Shown: positions 20,821 to 63,068 of the stretch, piece after piece | Numbering within the stretch: the stretch's first letter is position 1 | Layout: each line of letters opens with the position of its first letter | Virus record (IMG/VR): IMGVR_UViG_3300015261_000002 | Coordinates: 160,748 to 224,747 of that record | DNA: 64,000 nucleotides | Direction: 5' to 3' (one strand) | Position numbers and translations under genes: made by a program | Notes under the pieces: generated by a model | The model's database searches: none | The model's input: the letters and a program-made list of their open reading frames with translations, nothing else | Told to the model about the DNA's origin: nothing

Positions 20821-22680
20821 ATGACACAAAATCTTTCACCAATTATCGCGAAAGTCTGCAAACATGCTCATTATTCAGAGCATCGCTGGGACAAAACCAA
20901 AGACCTCCTCACAGCGAAGATCACGAACATCCATGAGGACGGTACTCGGTCGACAACCTTTAAGTCCTACGAGAATTACAAGCAGCCGTTCTGGATCATT
21001 AAGGAACAGCATCGCAAGTTCAACCAACCAAAGGACTACATCGAAGAACGGTACGTCAGGGAATACCGTTGCAATCGTCGTCAGATTCCATTTGAAGTCA
21101 AGAAGCAGTTGTTTGGGGCAGCTGATCGCAGTGCTTCGATTTATGACATCAAGTCGGGCAAAGGTATTCAATACGTGTTTGGTCTTGACCAGACGCCTGC
21201 GGTGCATTTGAAGCAACAGTTCTTTAAACGGTATGCGGAATACCAGGAAAAAGAAAAGTACACCATTGCGGCATTCGACGTTGAAGCCGACATGGAAGCG
21301 ATTGGTGAAGTGAAACCGATCATGATGGCTTCGGTCACTATGAAGGACAAAGCTTACTTCGCCGGGTGCCGGGGTTGGTATCAGTCTCGGCAGGACAAGA
21401 TTGACCCGAAGGTTCGTTTAACTGACTTTGCGATTTTAGCGGAGTTAAAAGCGGCCGAGAAGAAGTACCTGCAAGAACACTTGGATCGTCGAGGTTGCAC
21501 GATTGAGTATGAGTTGTTCGATACACCGGGTCAGGTAGCCTTTGCTTGTATTCAGAAGTTCCACGAGTGGGAACCAGACTGGGTACTGAGCTGGAACGCC
21601 GCTTACGATATGGAAGCGTGTGAGCGTGCATTGCGGTCCGAGGGTTATAACCTGGCCGACGTGTATTGCGATCCTCGTGTTCCAAAAGAGTATCGGATGT
21701 ATGAACTTAACCTGGGTCGTACACACAAGGTTAAAGAGAACGGCGACCGTACTCCTCTCGAACCTCAAGAGAAGTTCCCAACCGTTCGTTGTGTAGCAAC
21801 ATGGCAGTGGGCTGATGCCATGTCGGGTTATGCCATCAAGCGATTCTCTTCGGGTAAGCTCGAGAGTTACTCGCTGGAGGCGACTGCGCAACGGGAGAAG
21901 GTCAAGGGTAAGCTGTACACCGAAGAAGGCGCTGATAAGCTCCCAGGGTCTCCTCAGTGGCATCGATACATGCAGAAGCATTATCCGTATCTGTATTCGA
22001 TGTACAACATTGGCGATAACTTCCCAATCGAAGAGATCAACGAAACCACGCTGGACTTTGTACTGTCGATTCCAATGCTGCTGCGTTATTCGGAGTATTT
22101 CAACTTCGTTTCGCAACCACGTTTGATTGCAGATACCTTGTCCTTTATTGCGCGTGAGCATGGTTACGTTTGGGGCAGCACTCCTGCTAAACGGGATAAA
22201 GTCTTTACTGACCGACTGCCGACTCTCGACAACTGGATTGCACTTCTCGATACTGAGAAGAACGCAGACATGGGTCGGGCAATCTTTATCGGTCTGGATG
22301 ACGTTATCAGTGCGGGTCGTGGTCTTACTGACGACCTTGACGTTGAAGGGGCGTACCCAACCGGTACACTGGCTTCTAACGCAGCGAACAAAACCACGCA
22401 GATGGAGGTGTATGCCATTCAGGGTGCTAATGACATGAAGTTCCGGGAGATTGCCGTGAACTATGCCAGCAGTACTCAAGCGAATGCCATGGGTCTGAGT
22501 CACGCACTGTTCCGTTTCCCACAAGCCGACAAACTGCAATCTGAGTTTGAGAAAGGTTTGGAAGAACTGGGTTATGCAGACATGTTGAAGCAACTGCGTG
22601 AAAGTGCAGAGAAAGCAAAAGCAGAACGAGAAGCACGTCAAGCCAAAGTCCTACCAGAAGTACTGAAAGAAGCGGCGTAA
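20821..22680 (+). CDS. Split family-B DNA polymerase, N-terminal part (3-prime exonuclease plus motif A; phiKZ gp82-like)
   Basis: ExoI AAFDVEAD, ExoII SWNAAYDM, ExoIII YNIGD and polymerase motif A DLDVEGAYP. Confidence 0.8.
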   Translation: MTQNLSPIIAKVCKHAHYSEHRWDKTKDLLTAKITNIHEDGTRSTTFKSYENYKQPFWIIKEQHRKFNQPKDYIEERYVREYRCNRRQIPFEVKKQLFGAADRSASIYDIKSGKGIQYVFGLDQTPAVHLKQQFFKRYAEYQEKEKYTIAAFDVEADMEAIGEVKPIMMASVTMKDKAYFAGCRGWYQSRQDKIDPKVRLTDFAILAELKAAEKKYLQEHLDRRGCTIEYELFDTPGQVAFACIQKFHEWEPDWVLSWNAAYDMEACERALRSEGYNLADVYCDPRVPKEYRMYELNLGRTHKVKENGDRTPLEPQEKFPTVRCVATWQWADAMSGYAIKRFSSGKLESYSLEATAQREKVKGKLYTEEGADKLPGSPQWHRYMQKHYPYLYSMYNIGDNFPIEEINETTLDFVLSIPMLLRYSEYFNFVSQPRLIADTLSFIAREHGYVWGSTPAKRDKVFTDRLPTLDNWIALLDTEKNADMGRAIFIGLDDVISAGRGLTDDLDVEGAYPTGTLASNAANKTTQMEVYAIQGANDMKFREIAVNYASSTQANAMGLSHALFRFPQADKLQSEFEKGLEELGYADMLKQLRESAEKAKAEREARQAKVLPEVLKEAA

Positions 22681-43040: not shown

Positions 43041-43068
43041 ATAATGTAGGTTTTAAATCTTTTTACCC
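43041..43068 (-). promoter_or_regulatory. Candidate early (vRNAP) promoter
   Basis: GGGTAAAAAGATTTAAAACCTACATTAT, near-identical to the element upstream of phuZ. Confidence 0.6.
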
Positions 43069-51748: not shown

Positions 51749-51776
51749 GTAATATAGTCTTGAAAATTTCTTACCC
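51749..51776 (-). promoter_or_regulatory. Early promoter of chimallin
   Basis: GGGTAAGAAATTTTCAAGACTATATTAC contains TATATTAC, the reported phiKZ early-promoter core. Confidence 0.65.
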
Positions 51777-51969
51777 CAGCAGAAACCATCCCGCTTTTCA
51801 GCAGGGATGATATAGAGTAGTCGCTTTCAAAGCTGTATTACAAATTCTCAAATTGCGCAATGGTCCCCAGTAGGAGATCTTCTCCTGATGTGACTTGTTC
51901 ACATAAGATAGAGAATTCCAGTGAGACTTTATTTTAAACATCCCTCCCCATTTTTCTCGGACAGCCATT

Positions 51970-58867: not shown

Positions 58868-59866
58868 TTACATCACGAAGCCTTTCGAATCTGCACCCTG
58901 CGAGATGTTCTTCGGCGCGACGTAGGTGGATGAAGTTTGGTTTTTACGATTCTCCATCGCCTCGATATGCGCTTCGAGTTCTTTCAGGGCTTCACCGTGG
59001 TCCAGGACCATGTGCAGCTCGGTAGCGTTGCTTGGCAGCTTGGTGCCAGCGGCGAACACACCGGTGGAACGGATCACAGTGCCGGAGAAACGGCCGACGA
59101 TTTCGTCGCTGCTCTGGAACAGGGACGATACAGCAACCGGAGTTTTGCCTTTGAACTCGGCCACGCCTTTTTCGTCGTAGAAACGAATGCGGGACATGGA
59201 CGGCGGAACACCGTAGTGCTTCGAGAAGTTCAGCAGGTTCTTCAGGTCGCTGTGGTCTTGCTCGCCGTTGGCGTTGGTCAGGAACAGGGAAGCGACGTCG
59301 AGCTTGTCGATGATCGCACGGTTCGCATCACCGCGGTTGATGTCCGGGGTGTTGTCGAATTCCATGTACGGAACGACGCGGTTCAGGGAGTCGGCGTTGG
59401 TCAGCGACGCGTACGAGCGATAGCTGTTGACGACGTTGATCTCTTCGACCTGCGAGGTCTTGTCGTTGATGAAGCACAGCACGACCAGTTGGTCTTGTTC
59501 CCAGAGCATGCGCGCCAGAACGAAGCCCAGCATGGAACCAGTACCACCGCCGGTGGAGCAGACGATGATGTTGAACGGACGCGGTTTGTGCTTGGCCAGC
59601 ACGCTCTTCAGGAACATTTCTGCCTGAGGATAGTTGGCCGCCCGGACCTTACCCGAACCCTGAGCTTTCTTTTCAGGATCGTCCGGCAGGGTCATTTGCT
59701 CGACCGGGAACAAATCGTTGGAGCTGTTGCGGTCGGAGGAGTCCATGCCGATCATGAAGGCATGCTTGTTGTTGTCGGTGTGGGTGCCGTTCTTCAGGGC
59801 CACGCCGATGTTGATACCGGTACCACCGCAGAGGAAATACGCCAGATCAGAAGTGTTTGCATTCAT
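58868..59866 (-). CDS. phuZ: PhuZ tubulin/FtsZ-family spindle protein
   Basis: G-box CGGTGINIG, tubulin signature TGGGTGS, GSGK, T7-loop N..D motif, 332 aa. Confidence 0.92.
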   Translation of the reverse strand: MNANTSDLAYFLCGGTGINIGVALKNGTHTDNNKHAFMIGMDSSDRNSSNDLFPVEQMTLPDDPEKKAQGSGKVRAANYPQAEMFLKSVLAKHKPRPFNIIVCSTGGGTGSMLGFVLARMLWEQDQLVVLCFINDKTSQVEEINVVNSYRSYASLTNADSLNRVVPYMEFDNTPDINRGDANRAIIDKLDVASLFLTNANGEQDHSDLKNLLNFSKHYGVPPSMSRIRFYDEKGVAEFKGKTPVAVSSLFQSSDEIVGRFSGTVIRSTGVFAAGTKLPSNATELHMVLDHGEALKELEAHIEAMENRKNQTSSTYVAPKNISQGADSKGFVM

Positions 59867-59931
59867 GTGAAATGTTCTCTTTGAGTTACCAGTTGGAAGA
59901 ATTCGTTAGACCATTGACGGTCAACACACAG

Positions 59932-59959
59932 ATGATGTAGGTCTGAAATCTTTTTACCC
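59932..59959 (-). promoter_or_regulatory. Candidate early promoter of phuZ
   Basis: GGGTAAAAAGATTTCAGACCTACATCAT. Confidence 0.6.
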
Positions 59960-60001
59960 GACTTCAGCCCATTACCTACATCCCCAAGAATTGTTCCCCA
60001 A

Positions 60002-60185
60002 GTGAAAAAGAACCCCTGTTGCAAATGAGTACTCGGCACACCCAAGCTAACTCGACAACAGGGGCTGTCCTCAGAAAAGACCTAACACTTGTGAGAAGTA
60101 CCCGCAAACCGAAGGACAGTAGGACCCACCTCCAATCCACGTCACCAAGAAAACCCAGCTACGAGAAAAACTGGATGACGTGTGC
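60002..60185 (-). ncRNA. Candidate structured small RNA A (~185 nt)
   Basis: Three consecutive helical domains (60138-60182, 60065-60119, 60013-60064) ending in TTCTTTTT; no credible ORF. Confidence 0.45.
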
Positions 60186-60214
60186 AAGTATAAAATATAT
60201 TTATCCGGTGAGAA

Positions 60215-60443
60215 AAAACAAAACGCGAAATAATCCCACCACACCCAGACCCCCCGAAGGAGAGCTGAGTGTGGTGGAAGTATCTTTGGCAGGTGGAGCT
60301 TTTCCCAGCGATGGAATGCCAGGACAGCCGATCGTTAATGGGGGACAATCGACTGTTGCGGGTAGTGGACTCCAAACTATTCCCGCGGATACGCCAGGGC
60401 TAACTATCTTCAAAGCAGGAGCAAACTCACGAGTTCACATAGC
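60215..60443 (-). ncRNA. Candidate structured small RNA B or structured 3-prime UTR (~225 nt)
   Basis: Stems 60358-60386 and 60324-60356, then a long cUUCGg terminator stem 60236-60277 with a T-rich tail. Confidence 0.4.
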
Positions 60444-60451
60444 ATAGAAAA

Positions 60452-61039
60452 TTACGACCCCTTGGTTTCTTCGAATGGCGCATCATCGACGACTGCGCCC
60501 AACGTGACGACCTCTGCCGCAGGACGCTTGGACGGTGTCTCAGGAACTGGTGGAACTTCGAATACCTGGAGATTACCCCCGCACTCGATGCACAGGTTGA
60601 TCGCCGCCTTGACACCTGCCCGGGCTGACTTGCCAATCGACATCACCGCTACTGCGTATTGCGCGCCGTCCCCAACGGCAACGTATCCGGTAGACGGGAT
60701 GATGTTCAGGATTGTGCGCTTGTCGGCTTTGGTCGACTCCGACGGAATAACCTGGTAAGCGACCCCATTTTCGCCAACCACGAGTGCGTCGAAGGTAGAG
60801 TCCAGAACCGTGGCGTCGGTGGAGTGGTCCATGCCGTCCCGCAGCATCTTCCGGAACTGCGGATAAACCACGGGAGTTGCAATCACTGCAAACGCTACCG
60901 CTTTGACACCACAGATCTCCCAGTACTCCCCTTCGTCTGGTGTGTAGATCTTGCGGAACTCGGTTGGGCTGATTTGACCGTCGGTATGGATCGCCGAATC
61001 GGTGACCAGAAGTTTACCGTCGAATGCTGCTACGGACAT
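60452..61039 (-). CDS. Ntn-hydrolase (HslV/proteasome-beta-like) paralog with degenerate active site
   Basis: MSVAAFDGKLLVTDS..., AVGDGAQYA, CIECGG; clearly paralogous to the upstream gene. Confidence 0.65.
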   Translation of the reverse strand: MSVAAFDGKLLVTDSAIHTDGQISPTEFRKIYTPDEGEYWEICGVKAVAFAVIATPVVYPQFRKMLRDGMDHSTDATVLDSTFDALVVGENGVAYQVIPSESTKADKRTILNIIPSTGYVAVGDGAQYAVAVMSIGKSARAGVKAAINLCIECGGNLQVFEVPPVPETPSKRPAAEVVTLGAVVDDAPFEETKGS

Positions 61040-61054
61040 GATGTGTTTTCCTGA

Positions 61055-61597
61055 TCAAGCGGGTGTAGGTTCGGCAACCACAGGTCGTACAGACTTGACG
61101 GCTGGTTTTGGTGGAACTTCGAAGATTTGCAACTCACCACCGGAGTACTTGTCGAGACGGCAAGCGGCACGTACAGCGGCTTCAGCGTTCTTGCCAATCG
61201 ACAGGACAGCCAAAGCGTAAGTCTTACCGCTACCCACTGCTGCGTGTGGACCCAGGAGCAGCAGGTCATGGTGCACTGGACGTCCCTGGCGTTTGTGGGT
61301 TTGCCAGTGATAACACTGTCCGTCTTCGGTGATGAGCAAAACACCGAAGGCTACTTCGTCCAGGTCGTCGATCTTGGTCGTGTGGGTAACCCCGCTCCGG
61401 AGTTTGTCCCTGACCGATTCGATCGCCTTACCGTCACCCGAGACCCCAAAAGCGATTACGCGGTTTCCCTGTACATCCCAATACTCACCCTCTTCGGGTT
61501 CAAAGATTTTCTTGACCCCACCTGGGATAACCATCGCACCACCGGTGGCCTGCGAATCACTTACCAACTTCTGCCCATCAAAACAAATCGTCGTCAT
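61055..61597 (-). CDS. Ntn-hydrolase threonine peptidase (HslV/proteasome-beta-like)
   Basis: N-terminal MTT nucleophile, SDSQ, KKI, AVGSG, DKYSGG. Confidence 0.75.
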   Translation of the reverse strand: MTTICFDGQKLVSDSQATGGAMVIPGGVKKIFEPEEGEYWDVQGNRVIAFGVSGDGKAIESVRDKLRSGVTHTTKIDDLDEVAFGVLLITEDGQCYHWQTHKRQGRPVHHDLLLLGPHAAVGSGKTYALAVLSIGKNAEAAVRAACRLDKYSGGELQIFEVPPKPAVKSVRPVVAEPTPA

Positions 61598-61660
61598 GTC
61601 TACTCCTCACGTTACTTCCAAATCGTTTTTCTAGAATATGGTCTCCTAGGTTACAAACTA

Positions 61661-61687
61661 GTAATTTAGGTTTGAAATCTTCCACCC
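61661..61687 (-). promoter_or_regulatory. Candidate early promoter of the Ntn-hydrolase pair
   Basis: GGGTGGAAGATTTCAAACCTAAATTAC. Confidence 0.55.
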
Positions 61688-61698
61688 ACTGTATACCT

Positions 61699-61940
61699 CG
61701 TGCGTGCGTACGCGTTTCTTTGCTTTTTAAAAGCTCTAAAAGCAATAAAGAATAATAAATATATAAATATATTTATAAGGTTCTTTAGCGCACGGAGCGC
61801 GTGCGCGCACACACGCGATAATGAAGGGAAATATTTTTCCTTGAAATTAGCCAATTGACAAAACAAAAAACTTACCAAAGTTTTCCGAAGGAACTGTGAA
61901 AAACAAAAATATACCCTTTACCCCCCGGCCGCGGCGGCCG
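61699..61940. other. AT-rich palindromic non-coding element flanked by GC alternating tracts
   Basis: 16-bp palindrome TATAAATATATTTATA (61762-61777) between cgtgcgtgcgtacgcg and gcgcgtgcgcgcacacacgcg; cggccg-cgg-cggccg at 61926-61940. Confidence 0.5.
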
Positions 61941-62222
61941 ATCTCAAATAGAATATATAGGTAAGATGATATTTAAATGGGTCTTTTTCTGAGAGGGTTT
62001 TATACACCCCCGATACCCATCTGACAATCGATTATAACCCACCTAGGAAGCGATCCTAGCAGGTTTCAGTATGCAAGGTACCCTACCGTACCAGTTTTAA
62101 AAACTTCGCTGTATACGGCGATTTTGGAAGGTCATCCCCTTTTGGATACTCGCGTCGAAAAGGGATGCTATGACCCCTTCTTAACCCAAATTATTTACAT
62201 CGCCTCCTAGGAGTGACACGTC

Positions 62223-63068
62223 ATGAATGCGGTGGACTATGCCATCAATCGGGTCACGAACTGTGACATCGACGACTACCTGCTTAAACTTGCTTTCGAG
62301 TCCCCAAACGGTAACTTCGCAGGCAACTGGTACAACCTCGTTAATCACACCACCGTGGAACAGGGTATCCGTGAAAAAGTCATCCATCGTACTGTGCTGC
62401 CAGCTTGCAATGCGAACGGTGGTAAGACCGAACTGATCGACCTCAGCGGCGCCCGTATTCGTGACCTCGGTAACGCTTGCATCGAAGTGAACGTACCCGA
62501 CATCGTCACCGGTGGCCGCAAGATCATTTCGGTGACCGAAGTCTACTTGGGTTCCATGACCTCGTCGACCGGTATGCTGGGGATGAGTACAAACACGAAC
62601 GACATGTGCGGTCAAGGTTCGATCACGGACATGACCGAGGCATTAATCGACAGCTTGAGTCCAAGCCGTCAGATGCCTGTGACGTACAACAACATCCACA
62701 TGACGGGCAATAACTGCTTTGTGATCTTTGGTTTGAACTCGGGTACTTACTCGATGTCGGCCAAGATGATCCTCGAGTTCGATGAAGGCTTGAGCAGTAT
62801 CTCGACACGGCAGCATGAACACTTTGCTCACCTCGTGGAACTGGCAGTTAAAGCGTATATCTATCGCACCTGCCGCCGGCCTACCCAGGAAGCGATCATC
62901 CGTAGCGGCGTCACCCTGAACGACATCAAGGATGACATCTTGGAATATCGGGATGCCTGGAAGGACTACCACGAATACCTCACGACTGAATGGACCAAGC
63001 GCATGGCCTACAGTGACCGTCAACGCGTGACCGATGCTGTGCGTCGTGCTATCCCAAGGAGAATGTAA
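62223..63068 (+). CDS. Putative virion structural protein (281 aa)
   Basis: AGGAG RBS; first gene of a rightward operon. Structural role inferred from phiKZ synteny. Confidence 0.5.
   Translation: MNAVDYAINRVTNCDIDDYLLKLAFESPNGNFAGNWYNLVNHTTVEQGIREKVIHRTVLPACNANGGKTELIDLSGARIRDLGNACIEVNVPDIVTGGRKIISVTEVYLGSMTSSTGMLGMSTNTNDMCGQGSITDMTEALIDSLSPSRQMPVTYNNIHMTGNNCFVIFGLNSGTYSMSAKMILEFDEGLSSISTRQHEHFAHLVELAVKAYIYRTCRRPTQEAIIRSGVTLNDIKDDILEYRDAWKDYHEYLTTEWTKRMAYSDRQRVTDAVRRAIPRRM

What the first reader, a model, noticed from the sequence alone, without database searches (positions are those of the whole stretch)
60452..61597. Tandem proteasome-beta/HslV-like genes: one catalytic, one degenerate
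Seen: two adjacent paralogs with the same fold pattern and similar tails (LQ[IV]FEVPP.P...RP). The upstream copy keeps Thr1, Lys and GSG/DKYSGG. The downstream copy has Ser1, GDG and CIECGG. Both follow the early-promoter motif. Known: Ntn proteasome subunits use Thr1 and form rings, and eukaryotic rings mix active and inactive subunits. Inference: a heteromeric phage mini-proteasome or regulated protease acting early, possibly against host defence proteins.
Basis: partly seen in the sequence, partly recalled or inferred. Interest (0 to 1): 0.6.

Follow-up and report, generated by a model that had tools for sequence, protein, structure and literature searches.

The report
Paired phage mini-proteasome genes, Thr1 plus Ser1
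A giant soil phage carries two adjacent, co-transcribed copies of a small proteasome/HslV-like protease gene, one with a textbook active site and one that keeps a serine nucleophile but has lost the supporting residues; this is an uncommon, uncharacterised variant of a phage protein family already known from bioinformatics.

Summary
Two minus-strand genes, A (61055-61597, 180 aa) and B (60452-61039, 195 aa), are 39% identical paralogues. Both match PHROG 1040 'peptidase HslV family'. Both fold with high confidence into the HslV/proteasome-beta Ntn fold (Z 17 to HslV) but lack helix H2, the mark of the phage proteasome homologue PPH described in 2021.

A keeps Thr1, Asp17, Lys33, Gly47, Ser129, Asp166 and Ser169. 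B keeps Ser1, Asp17 and Lys33 but has Gly47Ala, Ser129Asp, Asp166Cys and Ser169Cys. B is under purifying selection, so 'degenerate' is too strong.

The pair sits between a DUF7484 gene and PhuZ tubulin, as the single homologue gp15 does in Pseudomonas phage EL. One promoter-like motif precedes A. B follows after 15 nt with its own ribosome site.

Related metagenomic phages show single, Thr1/Thr1, Thr1/Ser1 and triple (with a dead Gly1 copy) arrangements. All downstream copies form one clade.

A heteromeric ring, early timing and an anti-host role remain inferences. The complex prediction gave no verdict. The genome encodes no AAA+ unfoldase.

Verdict: new variant of a known, experimentally uncharacterised kind; moderate interest.

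The parts
61055..61597 (-). Gene A (180 aa, P0001): canonical Thr1 PPH/HslV-like Ntn peptidase subunit. It has no propeptide: the first possible start gives M-T-T. It carries Asp14, Lys30, AFG (Gly47 equivalent), GSG (Ser129 equivalent), DKYSGG (Asp166/Ser169 equivalents) and the tail PPKPAVKSVRP.
   Evidence: ORF. phrog_1040 E 3.5e-31. AF2 pLDDT 92.6. HslV Z 17.1, rmsd 2.3 A over 143 residues, with model residue 2 aligned on chain Thr1. Residue table.
60452..61039 (-). Gene B (195 aa, P0002): Ser1 paralogue. It keeps Asp14 and Lys30. AFG is replaced by AFA, GSG by GDG and DKYSGG by CIECGG. The tail is PPVPETPSKRP plus a short acidic extension.
   Evidence: ORF. phrog_1040 E 3.8e-16. AF2 pLDDT 89.8. 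Foldseek top hits are HslV and BPH. dN/dS 0.10-0.30. Member of a 100/100-supported Ser1 clade.
61040..61054 (-). 15-nt A-B spacer with a Shine-Dalgarno-like AGGA. There is no room for a promoter. The spacing is the same (15 nt) in six related loci and 16 nt in two more.
   Evidence: Sequence. Gene coordinates in L004, L005, L008, L009, L011, L016, L017 and L025.
61603..61608 (-). GAGGAG ribosome-binding site 5 nt upstream of A's ATG.
   Evidence: Sequence read directly.
61661..61676 (-). Promoter-like motif TTCAAACCTAAATTAC, 64 nt upstream of A's ATG. It is the same type as the 'putative phage promoter' annotated upstream of PhuZ in phage EL. It is a likely vRNAP (early) promoter by analogy.
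   Evidence: There are 12 genome-wide hits at up to 3 mismatches against about 1.5 expected, 11 of 12 on the minus strand. Review PMC7598289.
61734..61789 (.). Strongly AT-rich block in the 625-nt divergent intergenic region between A and the DUF7484 gene. It is one of only three such blocks in the window.
   Evidence: composition.
60212..60277 (-). Conserved long hairpin followed by a T-run, about 175 nt downstream of B's stop. It is a candidate terminator of the A-B transcript (inferred).
   Evidence: Alignment A4 columns 196-240 with compensatory changes at several pairs; sequence.
58868..59866 (-). PhuZ-like phage tubulin (332 aa), the conserved downstream neighbour of the module.
   Evidence: GGGTGS tubulin motif in the translation. 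Synteny with EL gp16 'tubulin PhuZ'. Weak or faint Pfam Tubulin hits on the orthologues.
62223..63068 (+). DUF7484 gene (281 aa), the divergently transcribed upstream neighbour and orthologue of EL gp14.
   Evidence: PF24302 on orthologues. 94-98% amino-acid identity across loci.

Best explanation
SHOWN. The window is the last 64 kb of a 224,747-bp EL-like, PhuZ-encoding jumbo phage genome from a rhizosphere metagenome. Genes A and B are tandem paralogues of the compact phage proteasome homologue: the HslV/proteasome-beta Ntn fold without helix H2 (PHROG 1040, most likely the PPH group). A has every residue needed for Thr1-type peptide-bond hydrolysis and no propeptide. B belongs to an old 'downstream-copy' lineage. 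Within that lineage Thr1 became Ser and Gly47 became Ala, and later, in the window's sub-lineage, Ser129, Asp166 and Ser169 were replaced. Ser1, Asp17 and Lys33 stayed invariant, and the gene stayed under purifying selection.

INFERRED. After removal of the initiator Met, A forms the active sites of a self-compartmentalising ring peptidase. B is made from the same transcript in similar amounts and co-assembles with A as a specialised subunit. B is either catalytically weakened or shifted in specificity. This would parallel the mix of active and altered beta subunits in eukaryotic 20S particles. The conserved Pro-rich tail (PPxPExxSxRP) is a docking or packing element. The operon is transcribed from a vRNAP-type (early) promoter. 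The phage encodes no AAA+ unfoldase, so the particle either degrades peptides and unfolded proteins on its own or borrows a host unfoldase such as HslU. The fast divergence of the module relative to its neighbours suggests that its substrates or partners are host-side.
For: Paralogy: 39% identity, E 6e-38.

Family: phrog_1040 at 3.5e-31 and 3.8e-16. tblastn finds the family in 444 phage records.

Fold: AF2 pLDDT 92.6 and 89.8. Foldseek matches proteasome beta, HslV and BPH at E 1e-6 to 1e-5. VIA gives Z 17.1 to HslV with residue 2 on Thr1. DSSP shows only three helices, so H2 is missing, as stated for PPH/RPC in PMC8665760.

Residues.

Selection: dN/dS is 0.04-0.20 for A and 0.10-0.30 for B.

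Conserved pairing: the order DUF7484 | A | 15-16 nt | B | about 550-580 nt | PhuZ holds in L004, L005, L006, L008, L009, L011, L016 and L017.

Phylogeny: all 8 downstream copies form one clade (97/98) and the Ser1 subclade has 100/100 support. The A and B trees have the same two-group topology.

Graded series: single copy in EL and L018; Thr1/Thr1 in L016 and L017; Thr1/Ser1 with GSG retained in L009 and L011 (GTG in L008); Thr1/Ser1 with GDG or GPG in the window, L004 and L005; a third Gly1, Lys33-less copy in L025.

Promoter motif; review.

No AAA_2, AAA or RAY-gp116-like ATPase in the genome.

Module divergence: A is 61-79% and B 51-83% identical across most loci (95% for A between the two closest, L009 and L011). 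DUF7484 is 94-98% and PhuZ 78-96% identical. Synonymous divergence in A and B is also far higher.
Against: No direct evidence of A-B binding exists: the only complex prediction gave no verdict. Paralogues with the same ring interface could equally form separate homo-oligomers.

No activity, expression or localisation data exist for any member. No RNA runs hold the sequence.

Pfam and NCBIfam proteasome/HslV models do not reach threshold. PDB sequence searches are sub-threshold. Family assignment therefore rests on PHROG and structure prediction.

The lack of H2 may change or abolish stacked-ring assembly. PMC8665760 itself warns of unprecedented quaternary structures.

The high dS of the module may reflect recombinational exchange rather than an arms race.

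'Early' rests on analogy with other jumbo phages, not on data for this clade.
Confidence: 0.55

Rival explanations
1. There are two independent homo-oligomeric peptidases. A and B each build their own ring and have diverged to cut different substrates (Thr1 against Ser1 chemistry, different S1 pockets). Adjacency is merely the footprint of tandem duplication.
For: Both keep the nucleophile/Asp17/Lys33 triad and are under purifying selection. In L016 and L017 both copies are fully canonical Thr1 enzymes at about 50% identity, which fits subfunctionalised isoenzymes. The complex prediction did not reach the mark (not evidence either way).
Against: No B-type gene was found without an A-type gene immediately upstream. 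The fixed 15-16-nt spacing suggests balanced co-expression. B's progressive loss of the second-shell residues Ser129, Asp166 and Ser169 plus Gly47Ala is the pattern seen in subunits that rely on active neighbours. A third, clearly dead copy in L025 makes sense only as a structural or regulatory partner.
Confidence: 0.25
2. B is a pseudo-enzyme that regulates or caps A, or that titrates a host factor such as HslU or another unfoldase, rather than a catalytic subunit. Ser1 is retained for structural or N-terminal-processing reasons only.
For: Gly47Ala, Ser129Asp, Asp166Cys and Ser169Cys in the window's B. There is a long stem branch to the Ser1 clade (0.68-0.84 changes per site). B-specific C-terminal acidic or helical extensions occur in relatives.
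Against: Ser1, Asp17 and Lys33 are invariant across all 9 clade members despite 50-55% overall divergence between the two sub-groups. Truly inactive relatives lose them: P0040 has Gly1 and lacks Lys33.
Confidence: 0.15
3. The proteins are not proteases. Like connectase, another proteasome-beta homologue, they might catalyse transpeptidation or ligation, or hydrolyse a non-peptide amide.
For: The superfamily includes a ligase (connectase; PMC8665760). PPH has never been assayed. Missing H2 and a conserved Pro-rich tail are non-canonical features.
Against: A retains the full proteasome/HslV residue set including Ser129, Asp166 and Ser169. The closest solved structures are HslV, BPH and catalytic beta subunits. 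Connectase lacks both H1 and H2, unlike these models.
Confidence: 0.05

Closest known systems
[quoted passage not shown] Pseudomonas phage EL gp15 and Salmonella phage SPN3US gp1
   Same: It is a compact proteasome-like Ntn domain lacking helix H2. It has no propeptide and carries a Thr1/Ser1-Asp17-Lys33 triad. It is encoded by tailed phages of Proteobacteria. It occupies the same locus as EL gp15, between DUF7484 (gp14) and PhuZ (gp16).
   Different: Here the gene is present as a conserved tandem pair, with a Ser1/Gly47Ala second copy whose second-shell residues have decayed. The domain is somewhat longer (about 160 aa against about 140). An EL-clade-specific PPxPExxSxRP tail is present that SPN3US, Dewey and FishSpeaker homologues lack. 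Only 4 extra places in 444 cultured-phage records point to second copies. Direct clustering with the authors' PPH representative was not tested.
Bacterial HslV (ClpQ) of the HslUV protease, including Bacillus CodW, which uses an N-terminal Ser (the latter from my own knowledge)
   Same: It is the best structural match (Z 16-17, rmsd 2.0-2.5 A over about 143 residues, N-terminal nucleophile superposed). There is no alpha-type partner and no long propeptide. Thr or Ser is the N-terminal nucleophile.
   Different: Helix H2 is absent. No Pfam or NCBIfam HslV/proteasome model reaches threshold. There is no HslU gene in the phage. HslV is homo-oligomeric, whereas here there are two, and in one relative three, differentiated paralogues.
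Eukaryotic 20S proteasome beta ring (active beta1/2/5 plus inactive beta3/4/6/7)
   Same: Gene duplication of a catalytic Ntn subunit was followed by loss of active-site residues in some copies while they remained under selection. A graded series is visible among related phages.
   Different: There are no alpha subunits and no propeptides. The altered copy keeps a nucleophile. Co-assembly is unproven. The duplication is independent and much more recent.
BPH (beta-proteobacterial proteasome homologue) and Anbu
   Same: These are stand-alone bacterial proteasome homologues without a known unfoldase partner. BPH is among the top structural hits for B.
   Different: BPH and Anbu retain both helix pairs and are homo-oligomeric. 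They are not phage-encoded.
Shewanella phage FishSpeaker tandem pair (OP589283, 20793-21317 'hypothetical protein' and 21389-21997 'peptidase HslV family protein')
   Same: It is a cultured jumbo phage with two adjacent family members directly upstream of PhuZ, one Ser1 with AFA (Gly47Ala) and one Thr1.
   Different: The order is reversed, with Ser1 upstream. Both copies have GVA instead of GSG and lack the Pro-rich tail. The two are sister on the tree (88-96% support, long branches). Independent origin is favoured but a single origin of Ser1 is not rejected (p-AU 0.093).

Membership tests
PPH (phage proteasome homologue, PMC8665760) / PHROG 1040 | Significant profile match to the phage 'HslV family' group | tested here: met
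   phrog_1040 E 3.5e-31 (A) and 3.8e-16 (B), covering residues 1-167 and 1-171.
PPH (phage proteasome homologue, PMC8665760) / PHROG 1040 | Proteasome-like beta-sandwich that lacks the second helix (H2) and has no large insertions | tested here: met
   AF2 models show H1 (58-68), then a loop, then H3 and H4 (125-133, 138-148) with no H2.
PPH (phage proteasome homologue, PMC8665760) / PHROG 1040 | Catalytic triad Thr1/Ser1, Asp17, Lys33 and oxyanion-hole Gly47 | tested here: met
   A has all four. B has Ser1, Asp and Lys but Ala at the Gly47 position, so B meets this only in part.
PPH (phage proteasome homologue, PMC8665760) / PHROG 1040 | Clusters with the authors' representative (WP_042125023.1) rather than with RPC, AAH or CPH | not tested
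   The representative sequence could not be fetched by accession with these tools. The length (about 160 aa plus tail, against about 140) leaves PPH against RPC-like open.
PPH (phage proteasome homologue, PMC8665760) / PHROG 1040 | Encoded by tailed phages or prophages of Proteobacteria | tested here: met
   The source is a 224.7-kb viral record with terminal repeats. It is syntenic with Pseudomonas phage EL. There are 444 phage records with homologues.
HslV proper (HslUV/ClpYQ peptidase subunit) | Match to curated HslV/proteasome sequence models (Pfam PF00227, NCBIfam hslV) | tested here: not met
   There is no Pfam hit at E<=1. The only NCBIfam hit is a sub-threshold one to archaeal proteasome beta (14.9 bits against a cut-off of 224).
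HslV proper (HslUV/ClpYQ peptidase subunit) | Cognate HslU AAA+ ATPase partner encoded alongside | tested here: not met
   There is no AAA_2, AAA or RAY gp116-like match in the complete phage genome, while controls were positive in 14 of 14 genomes. Use of a host HslU was not testable.
HslV proper (HslUV/ClpYQ peptidase subunit) | Ntn fold with N-terminal Thr/Ser superposed on HslV Thr1 | tested here: met
   Z 17.1, rmsd 2.3 A, 143 residues, model residue 2 aligned to chain residue 1.
HslV proper (HslUV/ClpYQ peptidase subunit) | Double hexameric ring | not testable with these tools
   Only one dimer-level complex job was available and it gave no verdict.
20S proteasome beta subunit | Alpha-type subunit partner and N-terminal propeptide removed autocatalytically | tested here: not met
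   Only two family matches exist in the whole genome, both beta/HslV-like. Both ORFs start M-T or M-S at the first possible start codon.
Hetero-oligomeric proteasome-like particle (functional analogy, not a family) | Physical association of the two paralogues | tested here: inconclusive
   Complex prediction ipSAE 0.31/0.31/0.28 against a mark of 0.32, 'no answer'. The indirect support is co-occurrence, fixed spacing and congruent divergence.

The most novel reading that the evidence does not exclude
This would be the first viral hetero-oligomeric proteasome-like particle. Thr1 (A) and Ser1/Gly47Ala (B) subunits would co-assemble into mixed rings, with a dead Gly1 third subunit in some relatives. 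Related soil jumbo phages would preserve successive steps of the same duplication-and-active-site-decay path that produced the eukaryotic beta ring. The particle would be made early and, perhaps through its conserved Pro-rich tails and a hijacked host unfoldase, remove host defence or regulatory proteins.
Probability: 0.25. Interest if true: 0.75.

Novelty: new variant of a known kind. Interest (0 to 1): 0.5.

Why it matters
Phage proteasome homologues (PPH, 'HslV family') are widespread: 444 cultured-phage records. No paper in the searched library reports an assay of any member, and no partner, substrate or oligomeric state is known.

This clade offers a natural series of arrangements: single copy, two active copies, active plus Ser1 copy, and active plus Ser1 plus dead copy. 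That series could show how catalytic rings differentiate into mixed active/inactive assemblies, a question normally approachable only by comparing archaeal and eukaryotic proteasomes.

The series also points to tractable models. EL has a single copy. FishSpeaker on Shewanella oneidensis MR-1 has a Ser1/Thr1 pair. Either could be used to find out what a nucleus-forming jumbo phage does with its own protease.

If the module targets host proteins, it would add a proteolytic arm to jumbo-phage host takeover or counter-defence.

Tried and rejected
- Megablast of the 1.1-kb locus against GenBank phages gave no match. Only the flanking DUF7484/gp13 genes match EL-like and Erwinia phages at about 71%.
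- Pfam, NCBIfam and PDB sequence or profile searches gave nothing above threshold. The weak top hits were all proteasome beta5.
- PADLOC gave no hit.
- Rfam on 59800-62300 gave only a chance miRNA-like hit.
- The search for related loci with the family alignment failed for lack of a conserved 7-10-column stretch.
- Complex prediction on A+B scored 0.31/0.31/0.28 against a mark of 0.32, 'no answer'. It is not used as evidence either way.
- The 'HslV' mention in the JSS1_004 anti-Dnd paper refers to host hslV transcription and is irrelevant.
- Erwinia phage RAY gp116, the 'HslVU family' nuclear protein, is a 569-aa HslU-like ATPase and not a homologue. RAY has no member of this family, and this genome has no gp116 homologue.
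- Independent origin of Ser1 in FishSpeaker is favoured by the trees, but a single origin is not rejected (p-AU 0.093), so I make no convergence claim.
The recurrent motif is TTnAAACCTAyATTAy.
- The sequencing-run search found only DNA holders (rhizosphere and soil metagenomes) and no RNA. Read laying was not run, because contigs from the likely source sample would add nothing.
- The family was already assigned.
Full report
WHAT IS THERE

The window is the last 64 kb of a 224,747-bp IMG/VR virus record with direct terminal repeats, scored 100% complete. The best DNA holder among public runs is a rhizosphere metagenome.

At the stated coordinates there are two minus-strand ORFs.
- A is 61055-61597 (180 aa, P0001).
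- B is 60452-61039 (195 aa, P0002).

They are 39% identical over 175 residues, E 6e-38. Each ORF begins at the first possible start codon after an upstream stop, reading M-T-T and M-S-V. Neither therefore has a propeptide, and removal of the initiator Met would expose Thr1 and Ser1.

A has a GAGGAG ribosome site 5 nt upstream of its ATG. B starts 15 nt after A's stop behind an AGGA, with no room for a promoter.

FAMILY AND FOLD

Both proteins match PHROG 1040 'peptidase HslV family', at 3.5e-31 and 3.8e-16. Pfam gives nothing and NCBIfam only a far sub-threshold archaeal proteasome-beta hit. PDB sequence and profile searches stay at E 0.02-0.2, although all top hits are beta5 subunits.

AlphaFold2 with a 40-sequence alignment gives confident models, pLDDT 92.6 and 89.8.
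- Foldseek matches proteasome beta, HslV and BPH at E 1e-6 to 1e-5.
- VIA-align gives Z 17.1, rmsd 2.3 A over 143 residues to E. coli HslV. Model residue 2 lies on the chain's Thr1. Catalytic beta subunits and BPH tie within one Z unit.
- The models contain only three helices (58-68, 125-133, 138-148). The second helix of the canonical fold is missing.

Fuchs, Alva and Lupas (2021, PMC8665760) describe exactly this feature for PPH. [quoted passage not shown] They also describe the feature for the related RPC group.

BFVD and ESM-Atlas neighbours are many uncharacterised phage proteins of 145-190 aa. I found no paper reporting an experiment on any member.

ACTIVE-SITE INVENTORY

| Proteasome position | A | B |
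|---|---|---|
| Thr1 | Thr | Ser |
| Asp17 | Asp14 | Asp |
| Lys33 | Lys30 | Lys |
| Gly47 | Gly (AFG) | Ala (AFA) |
| Ser129 | Ser (GSG) | Asp (GDG) |
| Asp166 / Ser169 | Asp / Ser (DKYSGG) | Cys / Cys (CIECGG) |

B therefore keeps the catalytic triad as defined by Huber et al. and quoted in PMC8665760 ('Thr1/Ser1, Asp17, Lys33'). It has lost the second shell that orients the N-terminus.

N-terminal Ser is a working nucleophile elsewhere in this superfamily. A yeast beta5-T1S proteasome structure, 5d0w, appears. Bacillus CodW is an N-terminal serine HslV, which I state from my own knowledge.

Both proteins end the domain with LQ[IV]FEVPP.P...RP. Positions P162, P165, S169, R171 and P172 are invariant or nearly so in 40 relatives. 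The model stays confident (pLDDT about 90) to residue about 170. SPN3US gp1, Escherichia phage Dewey gp77 and the FishSpeaker proteins lack this tail. It is therefore specific to the EL-like clade.

GENOMIC CONTEXT

The locus is syntenic with Pseudomonas phage EL. There, gp13 and gp14 are divergently transcribed, gp15 is the single 'peptidase HslV family' gene, a 'putative phage promoter' follows, and gp16 is tubulin PhuZ. In the window the DUF7484 gene (62223-63068, +) and the PhuZ-like gene (58868-59866, -) flank the pair.

The motif TTCAAACCTAAATTAC lies 64 nt upstream of A (61661-61676, minus strand). It is the same motif type as EL's annotated promoter.

Genome-wide, the motif TTnAAACCTAyATTAy has 12 hits at up to 3 mismatches against about 1.5 expected. 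Eleven of the 12 are on the minus strand.

A review of jumbo-phage RNA polymerases states that such a conserved AT-rich motif upstream of presumed early operons has proved to be the early (virion RNAP) promoter wherever it was tested (PMC7598289). Early expression is therefore plausible by analogy, but it is not shown for this clade.

The complete genome has no AAA_2, AAA or RAY-gp116-like ATPase. Positive controls matched in 14 of 14 genomes.

COMPARATIVE EVIDENCE

Word-index protein searches recovered 40 relatives, all from metagenomes. Fetching their contigs shows the same architecture in eight other loci: L004, L005, L006, L008, L009, L011, L016 and L017. In each, the order is DUF7484, A-type gene, 15-16 nt, B-type gene, about 550-580 nt, PhuZ. 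EL and L018 have a single copy.

The downstream copies of all eight EL-like pairs analysed form one clade (97/98). Within it, the Ser1 proteins form a 100/100 subclade on a long stem. The Thr1 downstream copies of L016 and L017 are fully canonical and 48-52% identical to their upstream partners.

The states therefore form a series.
1. Single Thr1 gene.
2. Thr1/Thr1 pair.
3. Thr1/Ser1 pair in which B has Gly47Ala, keeps GSG (GTG in L008) and has N-x-D-[TS]-A-G (L008, L009, L011).
4. Thr1/Ser1 pair in which B also has GDG or GPG and CIECGG (window, L004, L005).

One contig, L025, carries three tandem copies. A Gly1 protein that has also lost Lys33 (P0040) precedes an A-type and a B-type gene.

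The cultured Shewanella phage FishSpeaker has a Ser1(AFA)/Thr1 pair next to PhuZ in the opposite order. Only one of the two is annotated. The trees make the two FishSpeaker proteins sisters, but both sit on long branches. An AU test does not reject a single origin of all Ser1 copies (p 0.093). I therefore do not claim convergence.

SELECTION

Pairwise dN/dS is 0.04-0.20 for A and 0.10-0.30 for B. B is not decaying neutrally.

The module diverges much faster than its neighbours. The figures below are amino-acid identities across loci.

| Gene | Amino-acid identity across loci |
|---|---|
| A | 61-79% (95% between the two closest loci, L009 and L011) |
| B | 51-83% |
| DUF7484 | 94-98% |
| PhuZ | 78-96% |

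Synonymous divergence also differs. dS is about 0.8-2.5 (saturated) in A and B for most pairs, against about 0.3-0.9 in the flanks. A and B split the loci into the same two groups, so they diverge as a unit.

This pattern fits either an arms-race or host-interaction gene, or exchange of the whole module by recombination. I cannot separate the two.

HOW IT MOST LIKELY WORKS

Shown:
- The fold, the residue inventory, the operon-like layout and the conserved pairing.
- Purifying selection on both genes.
- Absence of a phage-encoded unfoldase.

Inferred:
- A supplies active Thr1 sites of a ring peptidase.
- B is made from the same message and co-assembles as a specialised subunit, either weakened or shifted in specificity.
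- The Pro-rich tail mediates packing or docking.
- Expression is early.
- Substrates are host-side, possibly delivered by a host unfoldase.

The one complex prediction allowed scored 0.31 against a mark of 0.32.

The main rival is two separate homo-oligomeric isoenzymes. Lesser rivals are a pure pseudo-enzyme or decoy role for B, and non-proteolytic chemistry like that of connectase.

COMPARISON WITH KNOWN SYSTEMS

It works like HslV, BPH and the proteasome beta ring. In membership terms it is best filed under the phage proteasome homologue PPH / PHROG 1040.

It fails the tests for HslV proper:
- no curated-model match;
- no H2;
- no HslU.

It also fails the tests for 20S beta subunits:
- no alpha partner;
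- no propeptide.

NOVELTY AND SCORE

The family and its presence in EL-like phages are known from bioinformatics. The following points are not described in anything I could find:
- the conserved two-gene (sometimes three-gene) module;
- the Ser1/Gly47Ala paralogue lineage;
- the stepwise decay series;
- the clade-specific Pro-rich tail.

Only 448 places in 444 cultured-phage records indicate that second copies are rare. This is a new variant of a known kind. Interest is moderate at 0.5, because all functional claims remain inference. It would rise if mixed rings were demonstrated.

Noticed in passing
window 59867-60451 (minus strand), between gene B and PhuZ; alignment A4: The 585-nt intergenic region is better conserved at the nucleotide level than the A and B coding genes. 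It contains a near-invariant block right after B's stop and several hairpins with compensatory changes (30 of 92 predicted pairs). It also has two hairpin-plus-T-run elements, an invariant ATATTTTATACTTG motif (about 60189-60204) and a PhuZ promoter-like motif. It may hold a structured 3' UTR and/or a small non-coding RNA. There is no Rfam match.
   Followed up: partly
whole genome G000 (window motif copies at 43041-43056, 51749-51764, 51826-51841, 61661-61676): The promoter-like motif TTnAAACCTAyATTAy occurs 12 times at up to 3 mismatches against about 1.5 expected. Eleven of the 12 copies are on the minus strand. It matches the 'putative phage promoter' annotated in phage EL.
   Followed up: partly
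L025:910-2655 (JGI 3300046557 contig Ga0495622_0008184): A related phage contig carries three tandem paralogues upstream of PhuZ. The first is a 170-aa copy with Gly1, no Lys33, GHG and DKRNWE, so it is clearly non-catalytic. An A-type gene and a Ser1 B-type gene follow it.
   Followed up: partly
L013:3396-3920 (Shewanella phage FishSpeaker OP589283, 20793-21317): A gene annotated 'hypothetical protein' (UYE93421.1) is a second family member, profile E 1.8e-24. It has Ser1 and AFA. It lies immediately upstream of the annotated HslV-family gene and PhuZ, so this cultured phage has an unannotated Ser1/Thr1 pair.
   Followed up: yes
window 60452-61597 against flanks 58868-59866 and 62223-63068; loci L004-L011: The A/B module is a divergence hot spot. 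Amino-acid identity is 51-83% for most pairs and dS is about 0.8-2.5. The flanking DUF7484 gene is 94-98% identical and PhuZ 78-96%, with dS about 0.3-0.9. The cause may be either fast evolution or modular recombination.
   Followed up: partly
L021:1353-3062 (Erwinia phage RAY gp116): The nuclear-localised 'HslVU family' protein of RAY reported by Prichard et al. is a 569-aa HslU-like ATPase. RAY has no PPH-type gene, and this phage has PPH genes but no such ATPase. The two components are not found together in these genomes.
   Followed up: yes
window 61699-61715 and 61795-61830 (flanking the AT-rich block 61734-61789): Short GC-rich alternating purine-pyrimidine palindromes (GTGCGTGCGTACGCG-like) bracket the AT-rich block upstream of gene A. 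Their significance is unknown.
   Followed up: no
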